Shown here piece by piece: positions 6,750 through 59,037 of a stretch of 64,000 nt of DNA (position 1 is its first letter; the number at the start of each line of letters is the position of its first letter). A program made the position numbers and the translations under genes. The notes under the pieces were generated by a model. The model was not told the origin of the DNA. It made no database searches and was given only the letters and a program-made list of their open reading frames with translations. This DNA comes from Octopus sinensis (lineage: Eukaryota), in NCBI RefSeq assembly GCF_006345805.1, contig NC_043000.1:163618001-163682000 (forward strand), written 5' to 3'.

Positions 6750-8345
6750 ATGTAAAATAAGATATAAGGCGAAAAATTACAGAAGTCATGTTTGTGTAGA
6801 TAAAGATTATTTAATCCATTACAATATGTACAGAGTCAATCGGTTTCGCTTCGCAAATCATGACTCAATGTTATGAAATCATACGTTTTTGAATTATAGT
6901 TGGCGTACCTTAGCACGTCTGGATATGTGATCACCGAGTGGTATTTAACATTATTGGGTTTGGTTGCTTTGTTCTCTGTGTAGTGAAGATCTACATCTTA
7001 AGGACATTCTTGTCGAACTTATGTAGTTCCTTCCGCAAACGGAAAATGTTATGACGTAGATGAGATTTTTAGAGGCGCAAATGAAGTCAGTTTTATTTTT
7101 TTATTTTTGTCCCTGTAAACAGGGAATTCTGAGCCTTCCATTATGTTGAAACATATTCCACAGTTCGGTCGCCCACATTATTTAACTCTTGCTTCCCTTA
7201 GTTTTTAGTATAGTTTTGCATTTGAGAGTATCCATTTTAGTGGTTTTGGCTCTTTGTTGCTTTTAATAATTTTATGGGCGCGTAGAATTTCATACAGCTT
7301 AGGGTCCTTATGCAGTATTGGAAGGTTTCAGATGAAAGTATAATATGCTTCGTTGTTTCTGGGGGTTGTATGTAGAAAATTATAAGCAAATAGTTTTAGA
7401 ATAGGTGCGTTCTTTTGTTTGACCTCTGTTAGTCTTTGTATATTAATTATTTTTGCACGTTTTATCCCATCATCTATATGCGAAGTTGGGTAATGTCTGT
7501 CGACGAGTATGTTTTTGGGTTCTTACAGTATGAGTTATATGGTGTGTTTTTCCGACACTATAGTGCAGATGCTTCTCGCCAGATTGAATATGATGTTTAT
7601 TGTAATATGTCTCGGGTGGCATGAGCTAAATATCAGGTATTGTTTCCAGTCTGTAGTTTTGTAAAATATGTCGGTTTCTCTTTTTTATTTACTTTTTTTT
7701 ATTAGTATATCTAGGAAAGGGAGTTCCTTAATGTTGTGTTCCATTGTGAATTCTATATTTGTATTTATGCTATCAAGAAGTCTTTTGAATTCCAAAAGTT
7801 TCTCCATGTTCTCATTCCATAGAATGAGACAGCCATCCAAATGTCTTTTCCAGTTTTCTTTTATGTATTGGGAAAGAGAATTTCCGAATTTTGTGAGTGA
7901 CTCCTGGTATATTGTTATTTCCAAATAGACCATTGTCAGGTTTACAAGAGCGGGAGCTGCCTTAGTTTTCATCGTAACTCCCATTATACAGTATACAGTG
8001 GTGTCAAATAGGAAGTGAATATGATGGAGAATAAATTTTACTGATTTTCCCAGCCAGAACTTTATTGCTTCTAATCCATGATTATCGGAGATCTTAGTAT
8101 ACAGGTTTACAACATCAAAACAGATCATCAGTGGTTTTTCCTTTACCTTTTTTGGGTGGGGGTGGTTTGATATGTCCAAATCATCTCTAATGTAACTTTT
8201 TTTATGTATTTTAGAAGTGGTTTCAAGAGGATGTCACTGAAGTAACTCAGTCGGTGCCTTTCACAGGATTGTCCAGCTATAATAGGCCTTTATTTAAGGT
8301 CTCCTGGTGTTGGTATATGCATGTATTACACAAGTGCACGCACGC

Positions 8346-8377
<32 letters not shown>

Positions 8378-8890
8378 TTTAGTGTGTTTGTAATTGCTTC
8401 ATTCATAATATGGATTTTACGAATATTCGGTAAGCTATAGAAGGGGATGGGTTTACATTTAAAGTTAGTTACGTAGTCTATTTCTGTTTTCATCATGCCT
8501 TTTCCCCTTTTCCGTGTAGTTGAACTAATGTCGAGAGACTTTCAATATTCTTTGGGAACTGTAGTCTTCGCTAGTTTCGTAGTAGTCTTCATTATTCAGC
8601 ATGGATATCGCTAGGTTATTGTAGTAAACCGTGTCCATCACTACTACCGCAATCCTTTTATCGTTTTCGTTAATTTTTAATTCCGCATCATTTTGTAATT
8701 TAATTAATTCTTTCCATTGGTTAGCGCTGAAGTTTGAGTTAATTTTTTTGTTTTTGTAGGATGTGATAGGGGACGTTTTCAATGGGGTTACAGAAATCGT
8801 CGACTGTTTTATTTCTACGTTTGTATCGGATGTAGTTACTTCTGTTTTTAACTAGTTAATCATCGTAAATATTAGAGTTAACTAGTGCTT
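6750..8890 (-). mobile_element. Penelope-like element relic (RT plus decayed GIY-YIG region)
   Basis: DKRIAVVVMD (8525-8782); RPIIAG..C; FDVVNLYT; AAPALVNLTM.YLE; WKRHLDGCLILW; IEFTMEH..KELPFLDILIKK; Cys motif CGRPNCGIC downstream. Many stops and frameshifts; CA tract inside. Confidence 0.9.
6833..6866 (-). ncRNA. Decayed hammerhead motif at the 3' end of the Penelope-like element
   Basis: GAGTCA/TGACTC 6-bp stem I flanking TGATT..GC-GAAA-CCGA-TT; core partly deleted. Confidence 0.4.
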
Positions 8891-9020
8891 CTGTAAATAT
8901 ACATATACATACATATATATATATATATTCACACACACACAACACACACATACACAAACACACACACACACACACCACACACACACACACACACACACCA
9001 CACACACACACATATATATA

Positions 9021-9058
<38 letters not shown>

Positions 9059-9059
9059 T

Positions 9060-11035
9060 TCATCTGCAGACCGACATGAAAACCTCCATTGAAAATCAAA
9101 GAGCTGTGGAGGAACAGTGGGTAATCAAAAACATCAAACAGAACCCAAAAGTGTTCTATTCTTATGCAAGCAAGCATAGAACCACTGTCTCACCCGTTGG
9201 GCCATTGATTGATGACAATGGCATTCCCCAACACGATGCTAAAGAAATGGCAGAAATACTGCAGAAACAATACTGCTCTGTCTTTAGTGTTCCCACTGAT
9301 ATTGACGCAAGAGAAGCGAACGAAGTTGACTCCCAACATAAAATCTCAGACATAACCTTCACTGCCACTGACATCACAGCAGCAATAAATGAGGTCAAAT
9401 ACTACTCTGCTGTAGGCCCTGATAGATTCCCCGCTAGTCTCCTGAAGGAATGTAGACACCAACTTGCAGTCCCTCTGACCAACCTCTGGAGAAATTCGTT
9501 AGACGCAGGTTATATACCGAAACAGTTTCTATCCCAGTCAGTCTTTCCCGGTTTTCAAACAGGGAAACAGATCCCTCGCACTCAACTATCGCCCAATCTC
9601 ACTCACCCCCCACATCATCAAAGTGTTTGAAAGAGTGTTAAGATCAAGGATAGCTGACTTCCTGGAGACCCACAAGCTCCTAAATGCAAATCAGCATGGC
9701 TTTCGCTGAGGCAGGGACTGTCTAACACAGCTCTTACACCACATTGAAGATCTACTCAAAGCCTTGGGAACAGGTTCGAACTCTGACGTCATATATCTTG
9801 ACTCAGTAAAGCGTTCGACAGGGTAGACCATAATATCCTACTCTCAAAATTGGCAAATATTGGAATCCGTGGAAAAGTTCTACACTGGATTAAGTACTTC
9901 CTGGCGAATAGAACACAACATGTTGTAGTTGATGGAGTCCACTCAAGCCCAGCAAAAGTCACCAGCGGTGTCCCCCAGGAGACTGTCTTGGGTCCGCTAC
10001 TCTTCATAATTTACATAAACGACCTTTCCAGTGTCGTACATTACTGCAAAGTGAAAATATTTGCTGATGACACTAAGCTCCAGCAAATCGTCAATGAAGA
10101 AGAAGACCGAACTCAACTCCAGTCTGATCTATATGCTGTGAGTCAATGGGCAGACAGAAACAAAATGCAACTGAACGAGGGAAAATTTGAGCTGATGCAT
10201 TTTGGAAGAAATTCCTCACTAAAACAGCCATACTCTCTTCCTTCAGGGGAACCACTCACAGCCTCTAACAATATCAGAGACCTGGGTGTAATTGTTGATG
10301 ACGATCTCAGTTGGAGTGCACACATCAACAAGAAGGTCAATATAGCTCGTAGGATGAGTTCCTGGATCTTGAGAACTTTCCGGTCCAGAGAACAAGGTGT
10401 CATCATACCACTTTTCTCCTCCTTTGTACGGCCACACCTCGAATACTGCTGCCCACTGTGGTCTCCTCATACAAGACAAAACATCTCGAGGATTGAATCA
10501 CCCCAGAGGGCACTCACTAAACGAATTGAAGGCATGGCTGCTCTCGATTATTGGGATCGCCTTAAAGCCTTGAAACTCTACTCTCTCCAGCGTCGTCGTG
10601 AGCGGTACATCATTTGTACGATGTGGAGAATATACCGCCAACTTTGCCCAAACGACCTGAACGTTAGCTTCAAGGTTCATCCAAGACTGGGACCACGGGC
10701 CATACGTCCCCTGCCCAATTCAAGATCACAGCATACATGTACACTGCAACATAATTTATTTTTCTCAACAGGCTCTGCCCTATTTAACAATGTCCTGAAA
10801 GAGATCAAAGAGGAAAAAGATCCCATCAACTTTAAACGGTGTCTGGATAGATTCCTTCAAAGAATACCTGATAAGCCACCCATAATTGGATACAGCTCAC
10901 CCAACAAGAACTTACTACTTGAATGGACCATAAACAAAACTTGACTTAAACAGGATTCGAATTATCCTATCAGGTGGTGCTATTAAGTTAGACATGGCCT
11001 GGACCAATCTTTGGTCGAAACATATCTAAGTTTAT
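9060..11035 (+). mobile_element. 5'-truncated CR1/L2-group LINE (ORF2 RT and C-terminus, 3' UTR)
   Basis: GPDRFPASLLKEC, NYRPISLT, QHGFR, KAFDRVDH, SGVPQETVLGPLLFIIYINDL, FADDTKL, RPHLEYCCPLWSP, LYSLQRRRER; a few frameshifts and one stop; ends at a TA tract. Confidence 0.92.
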
Positions 11036-14880: not shown

Positions 14881-14919
14881 ATTCACCACAACAGCAAGCA
14901 GACAGACAAGTAGGCAGGT

Positions 14920-14989
14920 AGATAATTAGATAGATAGATAGGTGGATAGATAGATAGGTAGATAGATAGATAGACAGGTAGATAATTAT

Positions 14990-15077
<88 letters not shown>

Positions 15078-15090
15078 TTGATAGATAGAT
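14920..15090. repeat. (GATA)n microsatellite
   Basis: Direct inspection. Confidence 0.95.
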
Positions 15091-16339: not shown

Positions 16340-16378
<39 letters not shown>

Positions 16379-16395
16379 TGAGAGAGAGAGAGATG

Positions 16396-16469
<74 letters not shown>

Positions 16470-31771: not shown

Positions 31772-34700
31772 TCAGGCAATTCGAAAAAGAACACATGAGT
31801 AAGTCGCCTTACTTCTCGTTGTCTCTTTTGTTACAGATTTATTGCTTAAAATAGTGTCGTCTTTCATACTGACCATTTTTGCCACTTTTACCCACTTTTT
31901 ATTAAAACATTCGTTCGACAAAGCCTTCCTCTCTATTCTCATCCTCCTTTTCAAGTGGTACTTGAAAAAGTTGACGAGAGACTGACCAGAGAGGAAGGTT
32001 TTGTTTGCAGTCCTTTCAAACGCGTCCACCACACACATTCTTTCTTTCCCATAGCCTTGAGCGTAACGAAAACCGTTTTCCCTTCCCGTTTAAAGGAAGG
32101 TGGTGGAACAATATTCACGATAGACTCGGCCGATAGGCGAGCCTGACCTACACGTGACAACAGCTGTTCGACGAAGGACCACAGCTCTGAAATATCTGGA
32201 CACTGCACGAGTGCGTGCAGAACGGTTTCGTCGCTCTGACCGCATCTCGGGCAGGTCGGTCCGGTGATTGTTTCGGAACCGTGTCTGTAGCTCTTCTCTC
32301 GAACAGGTAGTGCGTCTCGATAGCACTGCCAAGCCAGGGATTTCTGGAAGTTATCCATAGGCCCCGGCCCGAACGTCGTCCTGAACAGGCGGGTTAGGAA
32401 TTCCTCGTCGACGCCCAGGTTTGCCCCGAGTGTGTCGTCGGACCTCCCCTCCACTAGTCCTCTATAGAACGCTTTAGTCGTTTGTAAGTTGCACAAGTTT
32501 GACCCCGGTCGGCAGAGCCTGTAGAGCTTGGCGACACTCTCGGTGCCAATCGCCCAGTTTCGGTCTCTTTTTGATCCACGTTTGCAGTTCGGTCAGTGAG
32601 ACGAGCTGCGGGAAGTCGCGCCTCACAAACGGCGCCCACACTGTTCACCGTCGTCGATGAATTTCCAGAGATGTCGCAGTCTCAGCGCATGCCTGCGCAT
32701 CATCAACCACGGCATGCCCAGTCCTCCATTCAACGGATGTTGACAGCAAATGGACTTCCTCACCATCGGAACGCCACCTTCCACAGGAAGCGGAAGAGTA
32801 TGCGTTCCAGTTTGGTGATGGTGGCGTCGGGACAAGGTACGACGGTCAGGCGGTAATCGATGACGGATGCGATGTACGCGTTCGCCACCTCCGCCCGGCC
32901 TTTTAGAGACAGCTTTCTCTCGGCCCATGTTTGGCTGAGAGCGACCACTCTACTCTACTCGTGATCTCGTCCCAGTTCTTATCCATTTGGAGGTCCGGAC
33001 TGAACCAGACCCCGAGCAATTTAACCCCGTCCGTCCTCCAGCGTCCCACTACTGAGCCGCAGTCGGACGGCATGGGCTTGCTTCTCCAGGTGCCGAGTAG
33101 CAAACCCACTGACTTTTCCGGGTTAATCTTTGCTCCCGTCACCGTTTCATATTTTCTTAGTGTCTCGCCGACCAGCTCGATGTGCTGGTAGCTCGACACT
33201 ATGACGGTGACATCGTCCGCATATGCCGACAGACACGCTCGTCCCGCAACCCAGTTCCCGTGGGATGCCCCTCAGTGTCGCCAGCTTCCGCAGTAGCGGC
33301 TCGAGAGTCAATACATACAGAAGCGCCGACAGGGGACACCCCTGACGGACCGAACGCGTGATGTCAAACGGTTTAGACAGGTGACCGTTTACCCGAATCA
33401 CCGATCGGATGCCGCTATACAAGGCAGCGATCCAACCGCGGAAGACGGGACCGAAGCCAGCCGCCCTGAGGACGGCCGCCAAGTACCGATGGTCGACCCT
33501 ATCGAAGGCTTTAGACTGATCCAAATTTATCAGCGCCCCACCCATGCCAGGATCCTTAACTACCCTGTCCACAATGTAGCGCATCAGATGGAGGTTGTCA
33601 TGTATGGTTCTGCCCCGGCACGGCGCATGTTTGCGCCCTGTCGACCAGTTTACCAATGACAAGCGCCAACCTCTCGGCTATTACTTTGGCCAAAATTTTC
33701 AAATCTGCGTTGAGCAGAGTGATGGGCCTGAAATTATCTATAAAATTCCCCTTGTTTGAGTCTTTCTTCAGCAACGTCACTGCACCTCGGCTCACGAAAC
33801 CGGGGATTCTCCCGTTTTGTTGCCAGTTGCAGTACTGATGCCAAGAGTTCGCCAAACAAGTCTGGCATTCGACAATACAGCTCGTAGGGTAAACCATCCA
33901 ATCCAGGCGACTTATCCCTCGCGCAGCCCGCCATCGCATCCCACACGTCAGCGGCTGTGATGGGACTTTCACAACACTCCGCCTCTCTTGCCGAGAGCCG
34001 CGGCAGGTCGGTCAGGTAGGCACTGAAATCCATCCCTCGTTCCGACCCACCACTCGCACCAAACAGTCGAGCAAAGTGCTGTTGAAAGGCCTCACATATC
34101 CTTTCGGGTTCGAGTAAACTGCATCCCTGTTGATCTATTAGAGACCGAATGGTTGATCTGTTGCCACGCTGCGCCTCCGCTACCCGGGCCTCTCGCGCAG
34201 CTTCAATCCCTTCGTTCCTTAAGGCACGCATTTTAGCTCTGACGACGCAACCTTCGTGCTTGGCGTTGAGGTGTTGGTCGAGGGCCATCCTCGCAGCTAG
34301 CACGTTGGTTGCGCTGCCAGTGGTAAGTGCCTCTTCTAGTTTCTTAACTAAGTCTCCCTCTACTCTATTTCGTTCTATCGCTAATTCCTTGCTAAACCTA
34401 ATTGATTCCGATTTTATTGCCATTTTCAGGGCGTACCACCAGCGGTTGTTAACGACCGCTCCCGTCAGCGCCCTCTTAATTAACTCGCTAATCCGGTTCC
34501 TGTAAACCTGTCGCGCTAACAGCGACGTGTTCAGTTTCCAGTAACCGGGACCCTGCCTATGTTTTATCTAAGTCGAGCGTACACAACAAATTTGTGATCT
34601 GTGTAGCTGACTATTTTAAATTGTGGACATCCTACACTATCCCTATCCGCTGTCCTGCATAGAATTCTATCTAGATAAGATCTCGACGATCCGACGCGGT

Positions 34701-35273
34701 TTGTCCAAGTCCACGTTGGAACGTTCGGATGGTCGAGTCGGAACCTGTCAGACAAATGGAAACGTCTGAGCAGGTCTTTGAGGCTCTTACACCCCCTTCT
34801 ATTCCTATCCCTTCCCACATAATCTAGATGCGTGTCCAAGGTAGCGTTCCAATCCCCTACTAACAGTAAAGGTCTAGACGTACCCAGGAAAACCTCTAGA
34901 CGTCTGAAGAAATCCGCCCGACCCGTTAAGGACGGTGCATAAACTGCCATCAGACGGATGCACACCCATTTCTGCCATCCACGTCCAAGACAACCAGCCT
35001 ACCCTCCGGGTCTAGGAATATTGCTCTTACTTTTACCTTTAGACTCTTTCGAAAAAGCACCGCAGTACCTCCACCACCCATGTTCGGCAGACAGGGAGAA
35101 AAATAAATGTCAAATTGATTGCCAAACATGGACTCGAGGGCCCGCGGCTTACTGAGTCTGGTTTCGCTGATAGCTACTATATCAACGTCCAGTGACTTGA
35201 TGTCGTTTAGAAGGTAACCTTGCTTCCAAGCCGACGCCAAGCCACGCGCATTCACACAACCTAATTTAAGCAT
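31772..35273 (-). pseudogene. Tx1-like ORF2 (APE endonuclease, reverse transcriptase, C-terminal Zn finger), frameshifted
   Basis: CVNARGL, VAISETR, VYAP, LLVGDWNA, SYLDRI, TDHKFV, GPGYWKLN, KSPGLDGLPYE, NFRPITLLNADLKILAK, LDQSKAFDRVDH, RQGCPLS, YADD, CPRC..DETVLHAL..C. Roughly eight frame changes. Confidence 0.92.
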
Positions 35274-35339
35274 ACTTGACAATTACGAAAATTGTGTTTT
35301 ACACACTATATTAGAAGAGACAAGAGGCAAGAAGTGAGG

Positions 35340-37213
35340 TCACTTACTCATTTTAAAAGTTTCATTTTTTTCTTCTTCTTTTGTATCGTTTTTGATGAGG
35401 TGTTTGTATAGTATTTTCGACAGGTATCGTTGATACCCGCCTACCGCATTCGGAAATAATGTTTTCAGTATGTGGTGTTGTGCTTGTGTTATGTGTAAAA
35501 TTCTGATGTGTTTCGGTGGTGTGGTGTGCGGATGATTGTTTGTCTTAAAATCATCTTCACAGACGACCATGTTAGATTTGATGTAGTCCATTAATTCTTT
35601 ATTGTCTGTGTCTATTGCAGTTAGTTGTGTGTGTGGTTTTACAGGTTCATTACTTTTTTGATTGTCTAGGGGAATGTTGTCCTGAGTGAGATATCTCCCT
35701 GCTTTAATTCCTTGTTTGGTGGATTTTTTGGATCTTTTTCTTTTACCCCCTGTGGCTATTTGCCATTCCATCGAACTTTCGTCGTCCGAGGTATCAGTAT
35801 GGGGTAGAGGAAAAGAACAGGATCACTATGTATGCTTGTATAAATTGTTGATGTTTTGTGCGGTGTTTGTGTTGTTGTGGTGTTAGGGGTAGCATTTGTC
35901 TTCTCGTCAGTGTTTTCTGTCTTTTTAATTGTCGTCCTGGGTGTGGGTGTGGGTCGATTTTTTGAAGATTCAACAAGTTTAATTGGTTGTGACGTCAACG
36001 GTGATTGTGTTGGTACTGTTTTTCTTGGTGATGTTGTTGGGGTTTGTTGTTTTTCTTGGCGTTGTTCCATAATTGAGTGTGTTGGTGTTGGTGTTGGCAA
36101 CAAAGGGATTTTATTTGTTTTCTGAATTGTTCTTTCTTGTTTTTTCTGTACCAGATCGCACTTGGCAATCAAATGTTCGGGGCTGCCACATTTGTAGCAT
36201 CTAGGCTTTTTGCCTTCTGCCATAACATATAGGCATTGCCCATTCTCCAAGTATATCTTGTCGGGTAGGCTTTCGATAGAGGCCCCCTCAATCTGGATGG
36301 TCACAACTACTGTTTTTCCACCCCAATTGTCGTTTAGGTACACGGCTGTTTCTATAATATTGATCTTTTTCAAGTGGTAACAGATTGCCCCTGTTATCCA
36401 TTTGTTCGGCATATCGGGGGGTACATTTCTGATAGTAATTCTACTCACCCTCTGGTTTTTATAATAAGGGACCATGATGATTTCATCATTTCCCAGAGAC
36501 TCAGTAGAGTGAGCTTTTGCCACTTCCTGGTTAGGGAAGCGGACCACTACTGTGTTAAACTGTGGACCCCAGTTTATATACTCTTTTTCTTTCATTATAT
36601 TTTTTAAACATTTCTCCACATCAGTTTTTGTAATCTGTTCATTTGGTTTTTTGTTTTTTTCTAATAATTTTATATACAATTGTCTTATTTTCTATTTCTT
36701 GTTTTATACGTTGAGGTGTATGCAGGACTAAATCTTGTCCAGGGTTGTAAAGAGAGCTCTTGTTTCTATGAGCTCTTCATTTGTGAATGTAACAATCTCC
36801 TTTTTCTGGCGAAGAATATCTGCGAAATTTACTGTTGTTGACTTTTTTGTATTGGCATCTTCACTATTAGATAGTTCATTTTTATTGTTGTTCTTGTTGT
36901 TGCTGTTGTTTTTGTCAATAGTTTTCGTTTCAGTTTTATTTTTATCATTTATGTTGGTCGTGGTAGTGGTGGTGGTGGTGGTGGAGGTGGTGGTGGTAGC
37001 AGTTGTTGTCTCGTGGTTGCTGTTGTTAGTGGTGGTGGTGGCGGCGGTGGTGACAGGGCTGTTAACGCACGTGGTTGCAGCGTTCCTTTCACCGAATTTC
37101 ACGTTGGCATTTTCCGTGCGAACGTTCTTTTTTTTCTCTGTCGTTTCCAGACTAGGAAAATTTTGTTCCAAAAAAGAACGCGACCAGCGTTCAACAATAA
37201 AATTTCTAGACAT
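35340..37213 (-). pseudogene. Tx1-like ORF1 (Gag-like, zinc knuckle), interrupted
   Basis: Pieces 36728-37213, 35756-36679 and 35340-35771; CYKCGSPEHLIAKC (CX2CX4HX4C); Thr/Asn low-complexity tracts. Confidence 0.8.
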
Positions 37214-37751: not shown

Positions 37752-37838
<87 letters not shown>

Positions 37839-39990: not shown

Positions 39991-42900
39991 TAACCAGGCT
40001 GAGTCAAAAGATTTTCGAATTTCAAACTTTATTTAACAGTTCAAACAAATCACATGCGATTACCCACTTATCTATCGAAATTCATACCATCATATTCTAT
40101 TGTCTGTTCTATCCTATCATATTCTATTGTCTATTCTATCCTATCATATTCTATTGTCTATTCTATCCTATCATATTATATTGTCTATTCTATCCTATCA
40201 TATTCTATTGCCTATTCTATCCTATCATATTCTATTGTCTATTCTATCCTATCATATTCTATTGTCTGTTCTATCCTATCATATTCTATTGTCTATTCTA
40301 TCCTATCATATTCTATTGTCTGTTCTATCCTATCATATTCTATTGTCTATTCTATCCTATCATATTCTATTGTCTATTCTATCCTATCATATTCTATTGT
40401 CTATTCTATCCGATCATATTCTATTGTCTGTTCTATCCTATCATATTCTATTGTCTATTCTATCCTATCATATTCTATTGTCTGTTCTATCCTATCATAT
40501 TCTATTGTCTATTCTATCCTATCATATTCTATTGTCTGTTTTATCCTATCCATTATTCTATTGTCTATTCTATCTATCATATTCTATTGTCTATTCTATC
40601 CTATCATATTCTATTGTCTATCTATCCTATCATATTCTATTGTCTATTCTATCCTATCATATTCTATTGTCTATTCTATCCTATCATATTCTATTGTCTG
40701 TTCTATATCATATTCTATTGTCTGTTCTATCCTATCATATTCTATTGTCTATTCTATCCTATCATATTCTATTGTCTATTCTATCCTATCATATTCTATT
40801 GTCTATTCTATCCTATCATATTCTATGTCTATTCTATCCTATCATATTCTATTGTCTGTTCTATCCTATCATATTCTATTGTCTATTCTATCCTATCATA
40901 TTCTATTGTCTATTCTATCCTATCATATTCTATTGTCTATTCTTCCTATCATATTCTATTGTCTATTCTATCCTATCATATTCTATTGTCTATTCTATCC
41001 TATCATATTCTATTGTCTGTTCTATCCTATCATATTCTATTGTCTGTTATCCTATCATATTATATTGTCTATTCTATCCTATCATATTCTATTGTCTATT
41101 CTATCCTATCATATTCTATTGTCTATTCTATCCTATCATATTCTATTGTCTATTCTATCCTATCATATTCTATTGTCTATTCTATCCTATCATATTCTAT
41201 TGTCTATTGTATCCTATCATATTCTATTGTCTATTCTATCCTATCATATTCTATTGCCTGTTCTATCCTATCATATTCTATTGTCTATTTTATCCTATCA
41301 TATTCTATTGTCTATTCTATCCTATCATATTCTATTGTCTATTCTATCCTATCATATTCTATTGCCTGTTCTATCCTATATATTCTATTGTCTATTTTAT
41401 CCTATCATATTTTATTGTCTATTCTATCCTATCATATTCTATTGTCTATTCTATCCTATCATATTCTATTGTCTGTTCTATCTTATCATATTCTATTGTC
41501 CATTCTATCCTATCATATTCTATGTCTATTCTATCCTATCATATTCTATTGTCTATTCTATCCTATCATATTCTATTGTCTATCTATCCTATCATATTCT
41601 ATTGTCTATTCTATCCATCATATTCTATTGTCTATTCTATCCTATCATATTCTATTGTCTATTCTATCCTATCATATTCTATTGTCTATTCTATCCTATC
41701 ATATTCTATTGGTATTCTATCCTATCATATTCTATTGTCTATTCTATCCTATCATATTCTATTGTCTATTCTATCCTATCATATTCTATTGTCTGTTCTA
41801 TCCTATCATATTCTATTGTCTATTCTATCCTATCATATTCTATTGTCTATTCTATCCTATCATATTCTATTGTCTATTCTATCCTATCATATTCTATTGT
41901 CTATTCTATCCTATCATATTCTATTGTCTATTCTATCCTATCATATTCTATTGTCTATTGTATCCTATCATATTCTATTGTCTATTCTATCCTATCATAT
42001 TCTATTGCCTGTTCTATCCTATCATATTCTATTGTCTATTTTATCCTATCATATTCTATTGTCTATTCTATCCTATCATATTCTATTGTCTATTCTATCC
42101 TATCATATTCTATTGTCTGTTCTATCTTATCATATTCTATTGTCTATTCTATCCTATCATATTCTATTGTCTATTCTATCCTATCATATTCTATTGTCTA
42201 TTCTATCCTATCATATTCTATTGTCTATTCTATCCTATCATATTCTATTGTCTATTCTATCCTATCATATTCTATTGTCTATTCTATCCTATCATATTCT
42301 ATTGTCTATTCTATCCTATCATATTCTATTGTCTATTCTATCCTATCATATTCTATTGGTATTCTATCCTATCATATTCTATTGTCTATTCTATCTATCA
42401 TATTCTATTGTCTATTCTATCCTATCATATCTATTGTCTATTCTATCCTATCATATTCTATTGTCTATTCTATCCTATCATATTCTATTGTCTATTCTAT
42501 CCTATCATATTCTATTGTATTCTATCCTATCATATTCTATTGTCTGTTCTATCCTATCATATTCTATTGTCTATTCTATCCTATCATATTCTATTGTCTA
42601 TTCTATCCTATCATATTCCATTGTCTATTCTATCCTATCATATTCTATTGTCCGTTCTATCCTATCATATTCTATTGTCTATTCTATCCTATCATATTCT
42701 ATTGTCTATTCTATCCTATCATATTCCATTGTCTATTCTATCCTATCATATTCTATTGTCCGTTCTATCCTATCATATTCTATTGTCTATTCTATCCTAT
42801 CATATTCTATTGTCCATTCTATCCTATCATATTCTATTGTCTATTCTATCCTATCATATTCTATTGTCTGTTCTATCCTATCATATTCTATTGTCTATTC

Positions 42901-44275
42901 TATCCTATCATATTCTATTGTCTATTCTATCCTATCATATTCTATTGTCTATTCTATCCTATCATATTCTATTGTCTATTCTATCCTATCATATTCTATT
43001 GTCTATTCTATCCTATCATATTCTATTGTCTATTCTATCCTATCATATTCTATTGTCTATTCTATCCTATCATATTCTATTGCCTGTTCTATCCTATCAT
43101 ATTCTATTGTCTATTCTATCCTATCATATTCTATTGTCTATTCTATCCTATCATATTCTATTGTCTGTTCTATCCTATCATATTCTATTGTCTGTTCTAT
43201 CCTATCATATTCTATTGTCTGTTCTATCCTATCATATTCTATTGTCTGTTCTATCCTATCATATTCTATTGTCTATTCTATCCTATCATATTCTATTGTC
43301 TATTCTATCCTATCATATTCTATTGTCTGTTCTATCCTATCATATTCTATTGTCTGTTCTATCCTATCATATTTATTGTCTGTTCTATCCTATCATATTC
43401 TATGTCTATTCTATCCTATCATATTCTATTGTCTATTCTATCCTATCATATTCTATTGTCTATCTATCCTATCATATTCTATTGTCTATTCTATCCTATC
43501 ATATCTATTGTCTGTTCCATCCTATCATATTCTATTGTCTGTTCTATCCTATCATATTCTATTGTCTGTTCTATCCTATCATATTCTATTGTCTGTTCTA
43601 TCCTATCATATTCTATGTCTATTCTATCCTATCATATTCTATTGTCTATTCTATCTATCATATTCTATTGTATTCTATCCTATCATATTCTATTGTCTAT
43701 TCTATCCTATCATATTCTATTGTCTGTTCCATCCTATCATATTCTATTGTCTGTTCCATCCTATCATATTCTATTGTCTATTCTATCCTATCATATTCTA
43801 TTGTCTATTCTATCCTATCATATTCTATTGTCTATTCTATCCTATAATATTCTATTGTCTATTCTATCCTCCCATATTCTATTGTCTATTCTATCCTATC
43901 ATATTCTATTGTCTATTCTATCCTATCATATTCTATTGTCTATTCTATCCTATCATATTCTATTGTCTATTCTATCCTATCATATTCTATTGTCTATTGA
44001 TATCCTTATGACAGAAGCATAATTCCACGCTTATACCATTTGGCTGATTTAGAGGCAAAAAACTCCCTGCACCGTTTCCAAAGACATCCGTCTGTGTAGG
44101 AAATGAGCAGTAGTTCAGAAAAGGCGGTAATTTGATATTGCAAGGTCTGGACTGTAGACAGGGTGAAGCAGCACATTTGGCTCCTCAAATTCCTCGAGTT
44201 TGTGCTCGGCAACATTTGCAGTGTGTGCTGGGACAGTGTCGTGTTGTGGGAGTGCGCATCTCGCTGCAGTTGTAG
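39991..44275 (-). mobile_element. 5'-truncated mariner relic split by the 27-bp array
   Basis: QHDTVPAHTA, HPVYSPDLAISNYRLF, FFASK..WYKRGIMLL on one side; TIEYDGMNFDR* then a TIR-like cttttgactcagcctggt|TA on the other. Confidence 0.8.
40089..43998. repeat. 27-bp minisatellite, about 145 copies (tattctatcctatcatattctattgtc)
   Basis: Direct inspection; the unit is five TATYN-like pentamers plus 2 nt; no spacers. Confidence 0.99.
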
Positions 44276-44708
44276 AGCATAAAAAATGTTCGCGTTCACT
44301 AAAATCAAAAATGTCATCATTAAAAAACGACAAACATATAATTCGAAAGAAATAAAATATTCATGGTTGAGGTTATAAATTCTATTGCAAACGTAAAACA
44401 AGTAAACTTCATGACTCCGCTTGTTTTATTGTTCATAATAGGTATGACATTTTTTAACCGGTGAACTTATAAAGCCAAAAGATATCAAACTTGATATAAC
44501 TGCCGAAAGATTGGGGCATGATACTTACGGTACATTCTAAGTGTTAATAGTCATACTGATTTTTTTCGTGACTGCCTGATATCTTCGACGGCTAGTTCTA
44601 AAGATGTCAAGTAGTGGTTTATTTTACGAACTAGATGACCATGGCGATTGTCATTATTTCATGTGTGTGATGGAGCTGTAATCATATACCTAAGTATGGA
44701 TATATCTA

Positions 44709-44787
<79 letters not shown>

Positions 44788-45037: not shown

Positions 45038-45104
<67 letters not shown>

Positions 45105-45107
<3 letters not shown>

Positions 45108-46150
45108 TGTGTTCGGTACATCCCCACACTCTTTTCTTTCCACCAGCATGTTCATCAGTCACAATATTCTTCGACTCACAATGGTCCTGGAGGAATTGGT
45201 TGAGGCAACTGGTGTACATTTTGTACATAATGTTTAGCAAGCAATGGGCCTGTAGTTCCCTGCCATTTCGGTGATTTCATTTTTGGCAACAAGATTTGTC
45301 CTTGCTGTAGCAAGCCAATTTGGTATATCAGTCTGACCTTCCATAGTCCTTTTGAACATACATATCAATTGGTTTCTATAAAATGTCAGCTTCTTGTACC
45401 AATATCCAACTATTAGGTGCCTTCCAGATGCCTTCCCATTCTGTAGTTTGCCTACAACAGTTGCGAAGTTTTCTGCATCAATTTTGTTTTACTATTAGTG
45501 TTGGTACAATATTCTCTCTCAATTGTATTTAACCATGATACATTCAGGCTGAGATTCCGTTTTCGTTCCAAATTTTTTAACCAGAGTGATTGTAGATCTT
45601 CTTGGGGGGGGGGGGCTCTTAATGGTAATATTTTCCTTTCTCATCTCTCAGTACAATGCTTGTGGGCTGGCAGTAAGTTTGTGATTGATACTGGCTCGCT
45701 GAAACATTCGCATGCGATAGCGGGGTTTCTTCGCGCATCACCATGAGTTCATATTTTAAAGTGATTAGCTTTCCCTCAAGAGTTCGGTATTGTAAAGAGT
45801 TTCGTTCATTTTTGTCTAAGGTAGAGTTGGTGAGGTGTAACCTCATTTTTCTCCGTACATTTTATTGTTGTAGTTAACCATCCAATATTTAAGTTGGGAT
45901 GATCTTCGTCCCAGGATTAGTTTAACTGCTTCATGTATCCGATTGAAGAGTCATCTCGAGCTTTTTCATGGCACCGAAGTAAATCTTGGTTTAGTTGCTG
46001 AGTCCAAATAAGATGAGAAGAGTTCTTACGTCTACTGGGGAAGTAGTTCTGTTTTCATCAGTGGTGGCGTCGTTAGTTTCCTCTGTGGTGGTGTTAGCTT
46101 CAGCCATAATCATGTTAGCGAGATTCCAGCCAGACGCGAAAGGCTCTGTT
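45105..46150 (-). mobile_element. R4/Dong-clade LINE relic (pre-RT region and RT N-terminus)
   Basis: KLQNGKASG..IVGYWYK, IPNWLATARTNLVAK, NYRPIAC, NIMYKMYTS.LN.FL..H, GGKKRVWGCTEH. Confidence 0.8.
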
Positions 46151-49849: not shown

Positions 49850-50490
49850 TACGAGGTGTAGTAAAAAAAGTAAGCGATCTTGATTGTTTTTGCACAAAAT
49901 AATAATGCGTGATCAAAATTACAATAAGTATTAGGTGGCCGCATCCTTGCTGAGCATGCGCACGAAATTTCGTCTCTGTAAGTTTCGCCATTCGCCCGAA
50001 GTGACTCTTTGAGGACAGATGTGCGATTTTTCTTTTTGAGTAAAGCTGACCGAGCGCATGGAGCAAAGATACTGTGTCAAATTCTGCCAAAAATTGGTGA
50101 TACGCAAGCCCAGACTATTGAGAAGATTCAGAAGGCCTTTTGAGATGATGTTATGGGAAAAAACACAAATAAAAGAGTGTTACGACCGGTTCAAATAAAG
50201 TTGCACCCCAGTGGACAGTGAGCCAGGTTATGGCCAGACGATTAACAAAGAATACTATCTGGGGGTTCTTCGTCGCTTTCATGAAGTTGTGCGGCGAAAA
50301 TGTTCCGACTTGTGGGCAGCAAAGAACTGACAACTCCACCATGACAACACACCCTCTCATTCCGACCACTTCGTCCGCGCATTCCTTGTCAAGCAAAACA
50401 CACCACTTGTTCGTCAGGTTTCGCACCATGTGACTTTTGGTTATTTCCAAAGCTCAAAAAACACTCAAAGGGAGAAGATTTGAGTCAATG
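49850..50490 (+). mobile_element. Internally deleted mariner (irritans/Hsmar2-like)
   Basis: tacgagg start; MEQRYCVKFC, GQTINKEYYL.VLRR, LHHDN.P.H, APCDFWLFPKLK. Confidence 0.9.
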
Positions 50491-50509
50491 TGTGGAGACA
50501 GCTAAAATT

Positions 50510-50705
50510 AGCATTTGACCCAGACTGCCTTCTTCCAACTGTTAAACATGGAGGAGGATCTGTGATGATTTGTTGGTGGTGGGGGGGCTATATCTTGGAA
50601 ATTCGCCAGCCCGATGGTTTCCCTTCATAGCAGAATTAATAGTAAAGACTATTTAAGCATTTTATTTGATCAAATTCATCCTATGGTTGCGGAACTGTTT
50701 CCAAC
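50510..50705 (+). mobile_element. Tc1-type transposase fragment
   Basis: PTVKHGGGSVM..WGAISW...INSKDYLSIL. Confidence 0.75.
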
Positions 50706-52439: not shown

Positions 52440-52493
<54 letters not shown>

Positions 52494-52499
52494 TGATAG

Positions 52500-52597
<98 letters not shown>
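52440..52597. repeat. (GATA)n microsatellite
   Basis: Direct inspection. Confidence 0.95.
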
Positions 52598-56949: not shown

Positions 56950-58315
56950 ACTAGCATTATGACCCGTCGTTGCCGTGTCATAGTGCTAGTGCATGTATAT
57001 ATGTGTACATATTACATGTACATCTATATATACATCTACACATAAAATACAAAATACAAGGTTATATCTTGATATCGCTAGTGATAACAATACTGAAAAT
57101 ATATAACAGACTGGAATTGTAGGCCCGTCTCTTGCAATTTCGATCAATTGTATCTTGTCCTCCCTCTTGTTTAGAAGTGTGGCTACAATCCAGCCTACCT
57201 CTACTTCTGGGGGGAAATTTAATTTTTATCCGAAACGTCCTATGTCCCAGATATAAAGGTAAAAATAAAATATTTCCACTTTGCAAGGTTCGAGTCGAGT
57301 ACTCCCTTGCACGCTCCGTTGACTCGAACCTTGCTTCTATTGTGGCGAATTTACCGCCTCTGGTTAGATATCTTTCATAGTCGCACCAAGACACTTTTCG
57401 ATGGTGCTTTCCTCCAGGTGTTCAAATCTTTTTTTTCTCTACATTGTATACTTTATAGACAATAGTCTTTTCTTTAATTTAATTTTTCATTTCGTTTGAT
57501 GGTGTTATCCTAGATTCACTGTCTTTGTCGGTGATCAGTCCGAAATAGGTTTGTATTTCTTCCATTTTAATTTTAATGAGTTCGCGCCCGCCGACGGCTG
57601 CAGCGAAATTCATTTTTGGACTTTCTTCTATCGAAGGCATTCTAACAAAAATGCTTCCGTGTAAACGGTGAAAATATTGTCAATTTCCCCAAACAGGGAC
57701 ACAATTCAAGTTTTAAACACTAACCAAAGCCCCTTCTCCCAAAGGGGGAGGGTTATAGTTTACAATTATTTAACAAATGGAACACAAGAACGTTTCCCTT
57801 ATGAGGAACCAACAAACGTGATAACAATAGTTAAACAGTAATAATAATAACAGTACTCAGTAGAAGCGCTTTTCGAGAAAACAGACATTACATACAGCCA
57901 AACTTCATATAGATACTTAATGCCAGCTAATTAGCAGATAATCTAATTTTAACACGTAATACTGAAATAGTGGAAAAGATATGATATTGCTATGGGCTCG
58001 CCCTAGACAAGAAGTTGAACATTTATTTTTTCTGCCCATGAAACTACATGGACCCTAAGTAAGGCATTTGTAAAATTTGAATGAAATTGGTTGTGTAGTT
58101 CTCAAGTTTTAGGGAATCGTAGTGGAGAGATATGATATTGCTGTGGGCTCGCCCTAGGCAACAGGTTAAAAATGATATTGCCGATGACACTCCCCAAACC
58201 CTAAGTAAGGCATGTGTAAAATTTGAATGAAATTGGTTGTGTATTTCTCAAGTTTTAGAGAACACAGACAGACAGACAGGCAGGCACAGATTCTCAGTTT
58301 TATATATATAGAGAT
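56950..58315 (+). mobile_element. Non-autonomous Helitron/DINE-like element (ends inferred)
   Basis: 5' actagca..tgctagt short inverted repeat; two roughly 150-bp tandem units (57985-58260); (GACA)n then ttttatatatatagagat end. Confidence 0.55.
57060..57660 (-). pseudogene. Decayed ORF1 of another Tx1-like lineage
   Basis: EKCL..YLTRGGKFATIEARF..E.A..YST..L..I...P.Y..R..RI.I..PP aligns with EKCL..YINWGPQFNTVVVRF..E.A...ST..L..I..VPYY..R..RITIRNVPP of 35756-36679. Confidence 0.7.
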
Positions 58316-59037
58316 ACCACTCCCTCGGGAGTGGGGAACTCGTAGACTGCCCCAGTAGCACACACTTTAGCTATGCCACTGTTCAAGACACCAATATAGG
58401 GAGGCATACCTACTAGATTATATTGACCCCTGTGGTTGATTGCTACCTTAGGTTTATTAGATTTGAACAAAGAACGTGAAGAGCTGTTTGTAAATATCGC
58501 GAGGCAGTCCAAGGCTCTCGCTATTCTGTCTCTTCAACTGCTGTGTCATAAGTTTGTTGGCCGAAAGGTGTTCATGTAGATAATATGACGTGAAGTAGAG
58601 AACAGGATTATTATGGTGATACTGATGTTTATGGATTTTATGCTGCTGGTGACGAAAATGGCAACGATGATGACGACGATGATGATGATGATGATGATGA
58701 CTACGACGATGATGATGATGATGATGATGACGACGACGACGACGATGATGATGATGATGATTAGGAGGAGGAGAAGAAGGAGAGGAAGACGAGCAGGGGC
58801 ATGGAGACATCAGTATTATCTGTATTATTTAGGTCACAAGTTAGTAGTGATTGAATAGATGCATGATCAAAGACATTCCATCCATGACGTTCTTGCTGAT
58901 AGTAGGTTCTGGAACTGTTATAACAGATGGTTAGCCTAAATAGACCTACCTGATTAAGAGACATATGATCGAAGATAATTCTAGTCTCGAGCCATCCTGA
59001 TTACTTAGTACACCACACGGAAAAAGAAGGAAAAATA

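What the first reader, a model, noticed from the sequence alone, without database searches (positions are those of the whole stretch)
39991..44275. A 3.9-kb satellite born from the last codons of a mariner transposase
Seen on the minus strand: ...WYKRGIMLLS*GYQ*[TIEYDRIE*]x~145-TIEYDGMNFDR*, then the TIR-like end and TA. The flanks join seamlessly into the known mariner C-terminal pattern (Mos1 RGIHKLPERWEKCVASDGKYFE). Fifteen of the 27 nt (acaatagaatatgat) are transposase coding sequence and the rest looks like slippage of its AATAG/GATAG motif. Both parental junctions of a satellite birth are therefore preserved.
Basis: partly seen in the sequence, partly recalled or inferred. Interest (0 to 1): 0.8.

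Follow-up and report, generated by a model that had tools for sequence, protein, structure and literature searches.

The report
Minisatellite grown inside dead mariner transposon
A 3.9-kb run of 146 copies of a 27-base unit arose by repeated duplication of nine codons near the end of a long-dead mariner transposase gene, probably in an octopus-like genome: a clean but ordinary case of a tandem repeat born from a transposon relic.

Summary
Window 40089..44006 is one tandem array of 3,918 bp: 146 units of 27 nt, 2.5% mean divergence from the consensus. On the minus strand it sits inside the 3' end of a 5'-truncated, stop- and frameshift-ridden mariner copy (44303 down to 39993, then TA). With the array collapsed to one unit, the flanks align without a gap to Mos1 transposase residues 247-344 (E 2e-11). 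They also align base for base to four related mariner copies, two of them from Octopus bimaculoides and O. sinensis. All four carry this segment once.

A 28-nt stretch (codons R-W-Q-Q-T-I-E-Y-D in the family consensus) was duplicated. The first unit is still 28 nt. The unit shares this copy's private mutations, including its stop codons, so the element was already dead.

The array then grew by out-of-register exchange; a 10-unit block is duplicated 28 units away. I found no second locus in the window, in a translated search of a large protein collection, or in JGI metagenomes. On present evidence it is a single-locus minisatellite, not a dispersed satellite. It is a new member of a known kind, with no sign of function.

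The parts
39991..39992 (.). TA dinucleotide next to the element end (the mariner target-site duplication position)
   Evidence: Read directly. Similarity to the relatives L003, L004 and L001 stops at ...CCTGGT, immediately before it.
39993..40020 (-). 3' terminal, TIR-like end of the mariner remnant (+ strand ACCAGGCTGAGTCAAAAGATTTTCGAAT...)
   Evidence: Conserved in the relatives. It occurs once in the window and no inverted 5' partner exists, so its status as an inverted repeat could not be confirmed here.
40021..40067 (-). 3' untranslated stretch between the transposase stop codon and the terminal repeat
   Evidence: Aligns with the same stretch in L001-L004.
40068..40088 (-). Last six transposase codons plus stop (GGT ATG AAT TTC GAT AGA TAA = GMNFDR*); the downstream parental junction lies at 40088/40089
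   Evidence: Aligns to the family consensus GGGATATATTTTGGTAAATAA and to Mos1 ...DGKYF.
40089..44006 (-). Tandem array of 146 units. Consensus on the minus strand is AGGATAGAATAGACAATAGAATATGAT (27 nt). The first unit, 44006..43979, is the 28-nt ancestral-like form AGGATATCAATAGACAATAGAATATGAT.
44007..44303 (-). Degenerate remnant of the transposase catalytic domain (…VNANIFYALQLQ…QHDTVPAHTAN…YSPDLAISNYRLF*…EFFASKSAKWYKRGIMLLS*). It is 5'-truncated and carries stops, at least one frameshift and a 46-bp deletion relative to L001.

Best explanation
A mariner-family transposon inserted here long ago and decayed. It lost its 5' part and picked up frameshifts, stop codons and a substitution at the third catalytic aspartate.

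Later, a 28-nt stretch of its 3' coding end was duplicated head to tail. This stretch covers the codons that read R-W-Q-Q-T-I-E-Y-D in the family consensus. By then it had mutated to an ATAG-rich sequence containing stop codons. The likely cause was misaligned replication or repair within this cryptically repetitive sequence.

A variant that had lost one base (27 nt) then spread. The array grew to 146 units by out-of-register exchange or slippage between units, including multi-unit blocks. It is a neutral single-locus minisatellite with no function.

Shown: the array, its position, its ancestry from the coding sequence, single-copy relatives, and block duplications. Inferred: the molecular mechanism of the first duplication and of later growth, and neutrality.
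For: - **Seamless join.** The flanks plus one unit align ungapped to Mos1 residues 247-344 (E 2e-11). From CTTCTG to the stop TAA they span the same 60 nt as the relative L003.
- **Relatives lack the array.** Four relatives (L001-L004, 69-73% nt identity) hold the segment once. L005/L006 (67%) match only upstream of the segment, and L002 is O. sinensis and L003 O. bimaculoides. None of the six fetched loci contains the duplication junction AGAATATGATAGGATAG.
- **The unit comes from this copy.** The flank GGATATCAATAG and the unit GGATAG-AATAG both have G at position 1 and A at position 5. The relatives have (C/T/C/C)(G/G/A/A)ATGGC... there. The first unit differs from the consensus unit by only one substitution and one deletion.
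- **The element was already dead.** Every unit carries the in-frame stop codons (TIEYDRIE*), so the duplication came after inactivation.
- **Growth by exchange.** A 10-unit variant pattern recurs at a lag of 28 units (42101 versus 41350), and an 'HI..HI..' pattern recurs at a lag of 4 units.
- **No hairpins.** Neither strand of the repeat forms a hairpin (MFE 0 kcal/mol). Direct-repeat misalignment therefore fits better than hairpin-driven expansion.
- **Precedent.** Tandem repeats derived from transposons, including from their reading frames, are documented (PMC9659126; PMC12628747).
Against: - The source genome could not be searched. Other arrays of this 27-mer, or an orthologous locus without it, were not examined directly.
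- The closest relatives obtained are only about 70% identical. The ancestral state at three unit positions (G/T at position 6, C/T at position 10, and which base was lost) is therefore inferred by parsimony.
- Conversion of the first unit by the array cannot be excluded.
- Array length rests on a single assembly.
Confidence: 0.8

Rival explanations
1. One reading: only the 15 nt ACAATAGAATATGAT are transposase sequence, and the other 12 nt were made anew by slippage of the AATAG/GATAG motif.
For: AGGATAGAATAG resembles ACAATAGAATAT at 9 of 12 positions (my reading). (ATAG)n and related microsatellites are common in this window.
Against: The 12 nt match the sequence directly upstream of the array better: 11 of 13 positions with one gap. 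They continue it in register and share its private substitutions against four relatives. A contiguous 28-nt duplication needs fewer events.
Confidence: 0.08
2. A pre-existing satellite or minisatellite from elsewhere was inserted into, or captured by, the mariner copy, as proposed for some repeat-carrying MITEs.
For: Capture of tandem repeats by Tc1/mariner MITEs has been proposed for Xenopus miDNA4 (PMC12628747).
Against: - The unit is homologous over its full length to the mariner codons at exactly the insertion point.
- Nothing is lost or added at either junction.
- No other locus of the 27-mer was found.
Confidence: 0.03
3. The array, or its length, is an assembly artefact.
For: Long tandem arrays are prone to mis-assembly. 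No reads were available to check.
Against: The array holds 32 distinct unit variants in a structured, non-periodic order, with indel-bearing units. Both unique junctions are clean. This pattern is typical of a real array resolved by long reads.
Confidence: 0.05
4. The array is functional, for example as the 1,322-aa open reading frame on the + strand or as a regulatory or structural repeat.
For: All three + strand frames are open across the array (ORFs of 1322, 1303 and 1086 aa).
Against: - The open frames follow trivially from a unit that has no stop codon on that strand.
- The frames switch at every indel.
- The translations (SILSYSIVY, LSYHILLSI, LFYPIIFYC) have no relatives among 5.8 billion proteins.
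- There is no Rfam match.
Confidence: 0.02

Closest known systems
Minisatellites derived from transposable elements (for example the roughly 7,276 human TE-derived minisatellites cited in PMC9659126)
   Same: A short internal stretch of a decayed element is amplified in place into a kilobase-scale array. The element's own sequence continues on both sides, and other copies of the family lack the array.
   Different: The source here is the coding 3' end of a mariner (DNA transposon) transposase in a probable cephalopod genome. Most catalogued cases come from Alu or LTR elements, or from the non-coding or already repetitive parts of elements.
Satellites derived from transposon reading frames: CficCl-61-40 from the CACTA Jozin transposase in Chenopodium; PROsat and Pvc20 from L1 ORF2; HinfI from CR1 ORF2 (PMC9659126, Table 1)
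   Same: The repeat unit descends from protein-coding sequence of a transposable element.
   Different: Those are genome-wide satellite families, usually with longer units. This is one 3.9-kb locus with a 27-nt unit and both birth junctions intact.
Tandem repeats associated with Tc1/mariner: Xenopus miDNA4 MITE internal repeats, the Bari1 80-copy cluster in D. melanogaster, and Mboumar within Messor ant satellite (PMC12628747; PMC9659126; PMC2581405)
   Same: A Tc1/mariner-superfamily element is physically linked to a tandem array.
   Different: miDNA4 is thought to have captured a repeat and spreads it by transposition. Bari1 is a tandem of whole elements. Mboumar is inserted into a pre-existing satellite. 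Here a 28-nt piece of the transposase gene itself was amplified in an immobile relic.

Membership tests
mariner-family transposon (Tc1/mariner superfamily) | Transposase with sequence similarity to known mariner transposases across the catalytic domain | tested here: met
   The 99-aa conceptual translation of the joined flanks matches Mos1 (E 1e-11 to 2e-11, residues 247-344 of 345) and the SETMAR/Hsmar1 domain. The Pfam scan of this short, degenerate fragment gave no hit. The relative P0003 carries a weak PF01359 hit.
mariner-family transposon (Tc1/mariner superfamily) | DD34D catalytic triad | tested here: inconclusive
   The first D lies in the missing 5' part. The second D is present (QHDTVPAH). 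The third position reads N (LAISNY versus Mos1 LAPSDY). The spacing is one residue longer than in Mos1 (one-residue gap in the Mos1 row). This is a dead copy, so the triad cannot be judged.
mariner-family transposon (Tc1/mariner superfamily) | Terminal inverted repeats flanked by a TA target-site duplication | tested here: inconclusive
   The 3' end ...CAGCCTGGT followed by TA is present and conserved in the relatives. No 5' inverted partner exists in the window, because the copy is 5'-truncated.
TE-derived tandem repeat born in place | The unit is homologous over its whole length to a contiguous internal segment of the element | tested here: met
   The unit of 27 nt corresponds to 28 nt of the family consensus aCGATGGCAAcAGACAATAGAATATGAT. 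The 15-nt part is 15/15 identical in L003.
TE-derived tandem repeat born in place | Element sequence continues in register on both sides, and collapsing the array restores the element | tested here: met
   Ungapped alignment to Mos1 and equal length to the relatives across the junctions.
TE-derived tandem repeat born in place | Other copies of the family lack the array | tested here: met
   L001-L004 are single-copy at this site. The duplication junction is absent from all six fetched loci. Only distant copies (67-73% identity) were available.
Satellite DNA in the strict sense | High-copy family present as long arrays at several or many loci (typically heterochromatic) | tested here: inconclusive
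   There is one locus in the 64-kb window. There are no hits in the translated protein collection, which includes ORFs called on the O. bimaculoides and O. sinensis assemblies (detection control). There are none in JGI metagenomes. The source genome was not searchable.
Minisatellite | Unit of about 10-100 bp in an array of about 0.5-30 kb at a discrete locus | tested here: met
   27-nt unit, 3,918 bp, single locus. The size ranges are the conventional definition, taken from general knowledge.

The most novel reading that the evidence does not exclude
This locus is the founder, or one member, of a young satellite family that is spreading in an octopod genome. Under this reading, the same 27-mer arrays would sit in several copies of this mariner subfamily or would have escaped to new sites. 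That would give a dated, junction-resolved example of the step from transposon codons to satellite. Alternatively, it could be a hypervariable locus with extreme length polymorphism between individuals.
Probability: 0.1. Interest if true: 0.55.

Novelty: new member of a known kind. Interest (0 to 1): 0.3.

Why it matters
This is a tidy, fully traceable example of how a tandem array starts from unique sequence. The donor segment, both junctions, the ancestral-length first unit and array-free relatives are all visible, so it would suit teaching or a survey of repeat birth in cephalopod genomes.

There are two practical points. All three + strand frames are open for more than 1,000 codons, so gene callers may predict a spurious large protein here. 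The array is also a candidate variable-length marker. It does not change the current understanding of satellite origins.

Tried and rejected
- **Pfam scan** of the 99-aa joined-flank translation gave no family. The sequence search of solved structures did find Mos1 and SETMAR.
- **Word-indexed protein searches** found nothing for three queries: the joined-flank protein, one frame of the array, and a composite of the 131-aa flank ORF plus all three array frames. The last hit 8,000 candidates, possibly a cap. A local control showed that phmmer would detect same-frame array translations at E 1e-50 or better. The negatives are therefore meaningful, though not exhaustive.
- **Exact look-ups of three window ORFs** to identify the source assembly found nothing on record. 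The species of the window remains inferred.
The 54-aa in-window piece was used instead.
- **Rfam** gave no match in the window.
- **The JGI metagenome scan** for a 42-nt repeat string gave nothing. This says little for an animal genome.
- **An inverted-repeat search** for a 5' TIR in L002 and L003 found none. Those relatives are also truncated.
- **Hairpin-driven expansion** was rejected because neither strand folds.
- **A first flank join** cut 13 nt too many. It was redone correctly.

Full report
**What is there**

Tandem Repeats Finder reports a single array at window 40089..44006: period 27, 146.0 copies, 95% matches, score 7151. The 27-mer ACAATAGAATATGATAGGATAGAATAG (minus strand) matches 127 times at up to three mismatches. 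Every match lies inside the array and none elsewhere in the 64 kb; shuffled sequence gave no matches.

My own segmentation against the consensus AGGATAGAATAGACAATAGAATATGAT gives 146 units. Of these, 77 equal the consensus and 20 carry a T-to-C variant (…GAACAG…). The other 49 units fall into 30 rarer variants, several with one- to three-base deletions. Total edit distance is 97 over 3,918 nt, or 2.5%.

**The flanks**

Read on the minus strand, the sequence upstream of the array translates, across one frameshift, as …VNANIFYALQLQ…CALPQHDTVPAHTANVAEHKLEEFEEPNVLLHPVYSPDLAISNYRLF*…EFFASKSAKWYKRGIMLLS*GYQ*. Each unit reads TIEYDRIE*. The downstream flank reads TIEYDGMNFDR*.

A 99-residue conceptual protein made from the two flanks plus one unit, with X at stops, matches the Mos1 mariner transposase at residues 247-344 of 345 (E 2e-11) and the human SETMAR transposase domain. 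There is no gap at the place where the array sits.

After the stop come about 75 nt ending …GACTCAGCCTGGT at 39993, followed by TA at 39991-39992. This terminal sequence occurs once in the window, on either strand. tblastn with mariner proteins finds nothing further upstream on this strand beyond about 44303. The copy is therefore 5'-truncated.

It is also dead. It has stops and at least one frameshift. It has a 46-bp deletion relative to a relative. It reads N where the third catalytic aspartate should be.

**Relatives**

An exhaustive HMMER search with the 54-residue in-window piece found 24 proteins at 41-56% identity. Several are short pseudo-ORFs whose ends resemble this one:

- P0003: …LLAQQWPQSIEYNGIYFGK
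- P0011: …LLVERWQKTIEI…
- P0020: …LAKWYKRGTELLTQ

I fetched their DNA:

| Locus | Source | Identity to the joined flanks |
|---|---|---|
| L001 | Logan run ERR3431203 | 70% |
| L002 | GCA_006345805.1, Octopus sinensis | 69% |
| L003 | GCA_001194135.2, Octopus bimaculoides | 73% |
| L004 | Logan run ERR14857104 | 72% |
| L005/L006 | Logan runs SRR11869391 and SRR11869390 | 67% (match ends upstream of the repeat segment) |

In the alignment L001-L004 carry the segment once. The family consensus there is CTTCTGGCACAACGATGGCAAcAGACAATAGAATATGATGGGATATATTTTGGTAAATAA. This translates as L-L-A-Q-R-W-Q-Q-T-I-E-Y-D-G-I-Y-F-G-K-stop.

From CTTCTG to TAA, the window with its array collapsed has the same 60 nt as L003. 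The junction that only a tandem duplication creates (AGAATATGATAGGATAG) is absent from all six fetched loci.

**Where the other 12 nt come from**

It is in fact the preceding codons. The sequence directly upstream of the first ACAATAG is AGGATATCAATAG (44006..43994). This matches the unit's AGGATAG-AATAG at 11 of 13 positions with one gap.

The flank and the unit share two substitutions that none of the four relatives has:

- G rather than C/T at the first base
- A rather than G in the TGG codon

TRF and my segmentation both place this stretch inside the array, as a first unit of 28 nt that differs from the consensus by one substitution and one deletion.

The simplest history is that a contiguous 28-nt segment, A-GGATAGCAA(C/T)AG-ACAATAGAATATGAT, was duplicated. 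This segment covers codons R-W-Q-Q-T-I-E-Y-D after this copy's own mutations. A form that had lost one base then took over the array. The edge unit kept the original length.

The common AACAG variant matches the consensus of the relatives (CAACAG). It may be an ancestral state still segregating in the array, but I cannot show this.

Every unit carries the stop codons created by this copy's mutations (TGG to TAG, CAG to TAG). The duplication therefore came after the death of the gene.

**How it grew**

Coding each unit by its variant shows structure that single-unit slippage alone would not give. A 10-unit pattern recurs 28 units apart (starting at 42101 and 41350). A two-variant motif recurs at a four-unit lag. 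Rare variants occur in pairs far apart. This is the signature of out-of-register exchange of multi-unit blocks.

Neither strand of the repeat can form a hairpin: minimum free energy is 0 kcal/mol, no better than shuffles. Misalignment between direct repeats is therefore the plausible mechanism.

The donor sequence is itself cryptically repetitive (ATAG, AATAG, GATAG). ATAG-type microsatellites are frequent in this window. Both may have favoured the first misalignment. That step is inference.

**Is it a satellite?**

I could not search the source genome. Within reach I found the following.

- There is one locus in the window.
- All three + strand frames of the array are open, so an ORF caller would emit its translation. 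I searched the 5.8-billion-protein collection with those translations. That collection includes ORFs called on the two octopus assemblies. Nothing scored, either with one frame or with all three frames plus the flank ORF.
- A local control shows that such a match would score E 1e-50 or better.
- A scan of JGI metagenome contigs found nothing, which is of little weight.

On present evidence this is a single-locus minisatellite.

**Source organism**

The window is animal DNA with LINE reverse-transcriptase ORFs and dense microsatellites. The relatives of this mariner come from octopus assemblies. Other interspersed repeats in L003 match the window at about 80% identity. An octopod or other cephalopod source is likely but not shown. 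Three exact look-ups of window ORFs found no record. Mariner elements belong to the old repeat complement of coleoid genomes (PMC8967140).

**Comparison with what is known**

Tandem repeats born from transposable elements are well documented. Examples include thousands of human minisatellites, and satellites from L1 ORF2, CR1 ORF2 and a CACTA transposase (PMC9659126). The standard two-step model is a small duplication followed by expansion through unequal exchange (PMC12628747).

For Tc1/mariner, the reviewed cases differ from this one. They are a MITE carrying a captured repeat, tandem whole Bari1 elements, and a mariner inserted into an existing satellite.

This locus is therefore a new member of a known kind. 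What sets it apart is how completely its origin can be read, not a new principle. I saw no sign of function. The long + strand ORFs are a by-product of a unit that lacks stop codons on that strand.

**Verdict**

Interest is modest at 0.3.

Noticed in passing
window 50232..50515 (+): A second, independent mariner-like transposase fragment on the opposite strand. It matches P0001 residues 412-510 and covers part of the same protein region as the remnant studied, so it is a different copy.
   Followed up: partly
window 40054..44022, 40100..44011, 40587..43847 (+): All three + strand frames run open through the array (ORFs of 1322, 1303 and 1086 aa; peptides SILSYSIVY, LSYHILLSI, LFYPIIFYC). They have no database relatives, so they are probably spurious. 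They are a hazard for automatic gene calling.
   Followed up: yes
window 44118..44279 (-) and proteins P0010, P0012, P0020: The spacing between the second catalytic D (QHD) and the third position (N here, D in the relatives) is 35 residues rather than the 34 of Mos1. The Mos1 alignment shows a one-residue gap. This hints at a mariner lineage with DD35D spacing. The count was made by eye on degenerate copies.
   Followed up: partly
window 31951..36679 (-), with G+C 55% at 32001..34000: A string of ORFs from a non-LTR retrotransposon (endonuclease- and reverse-transcriptase-like). It is much richer in G+C than the 33-39% background, which suggests a young or foreign-composition LINE.
   Followed up: no
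window 7685..10944: Further reverse-transcriptase ORFs (164, 184 and 364 aa) from other retrotransposon copies on both strands.
   Followed up: no
window 45106..46000 (-): A reverse-transcriptase-like reading (…NYRPIACLNIMYKMYTSCLNQFLQDHCESKNIVTDEHAGGKK…) that breaks off at an (AT)34 microsatellite at 45038..45105. Together with (AT)44 at 44700..44787, it lies just upstream of the truncated mariner and may mark the event that removed its 5' part.
   Followed up: no
window 14919..15090, 16343..16469, 37752..37838, 52440..52597: Long ATAG/TAGA/AGAT tetranucleotide microsatellites, 22-43 copies each. The same motif dominates the 27-nt unit.
   Followed up: partly
window 57968..58262 and 58666..58760: A 146-bp unit present twice in tandem (83% match) and a 30-bp GAT/GAC-rich repeat of 3.2 copies. 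These are other small tandem duplications in the window.
   Followed up: no
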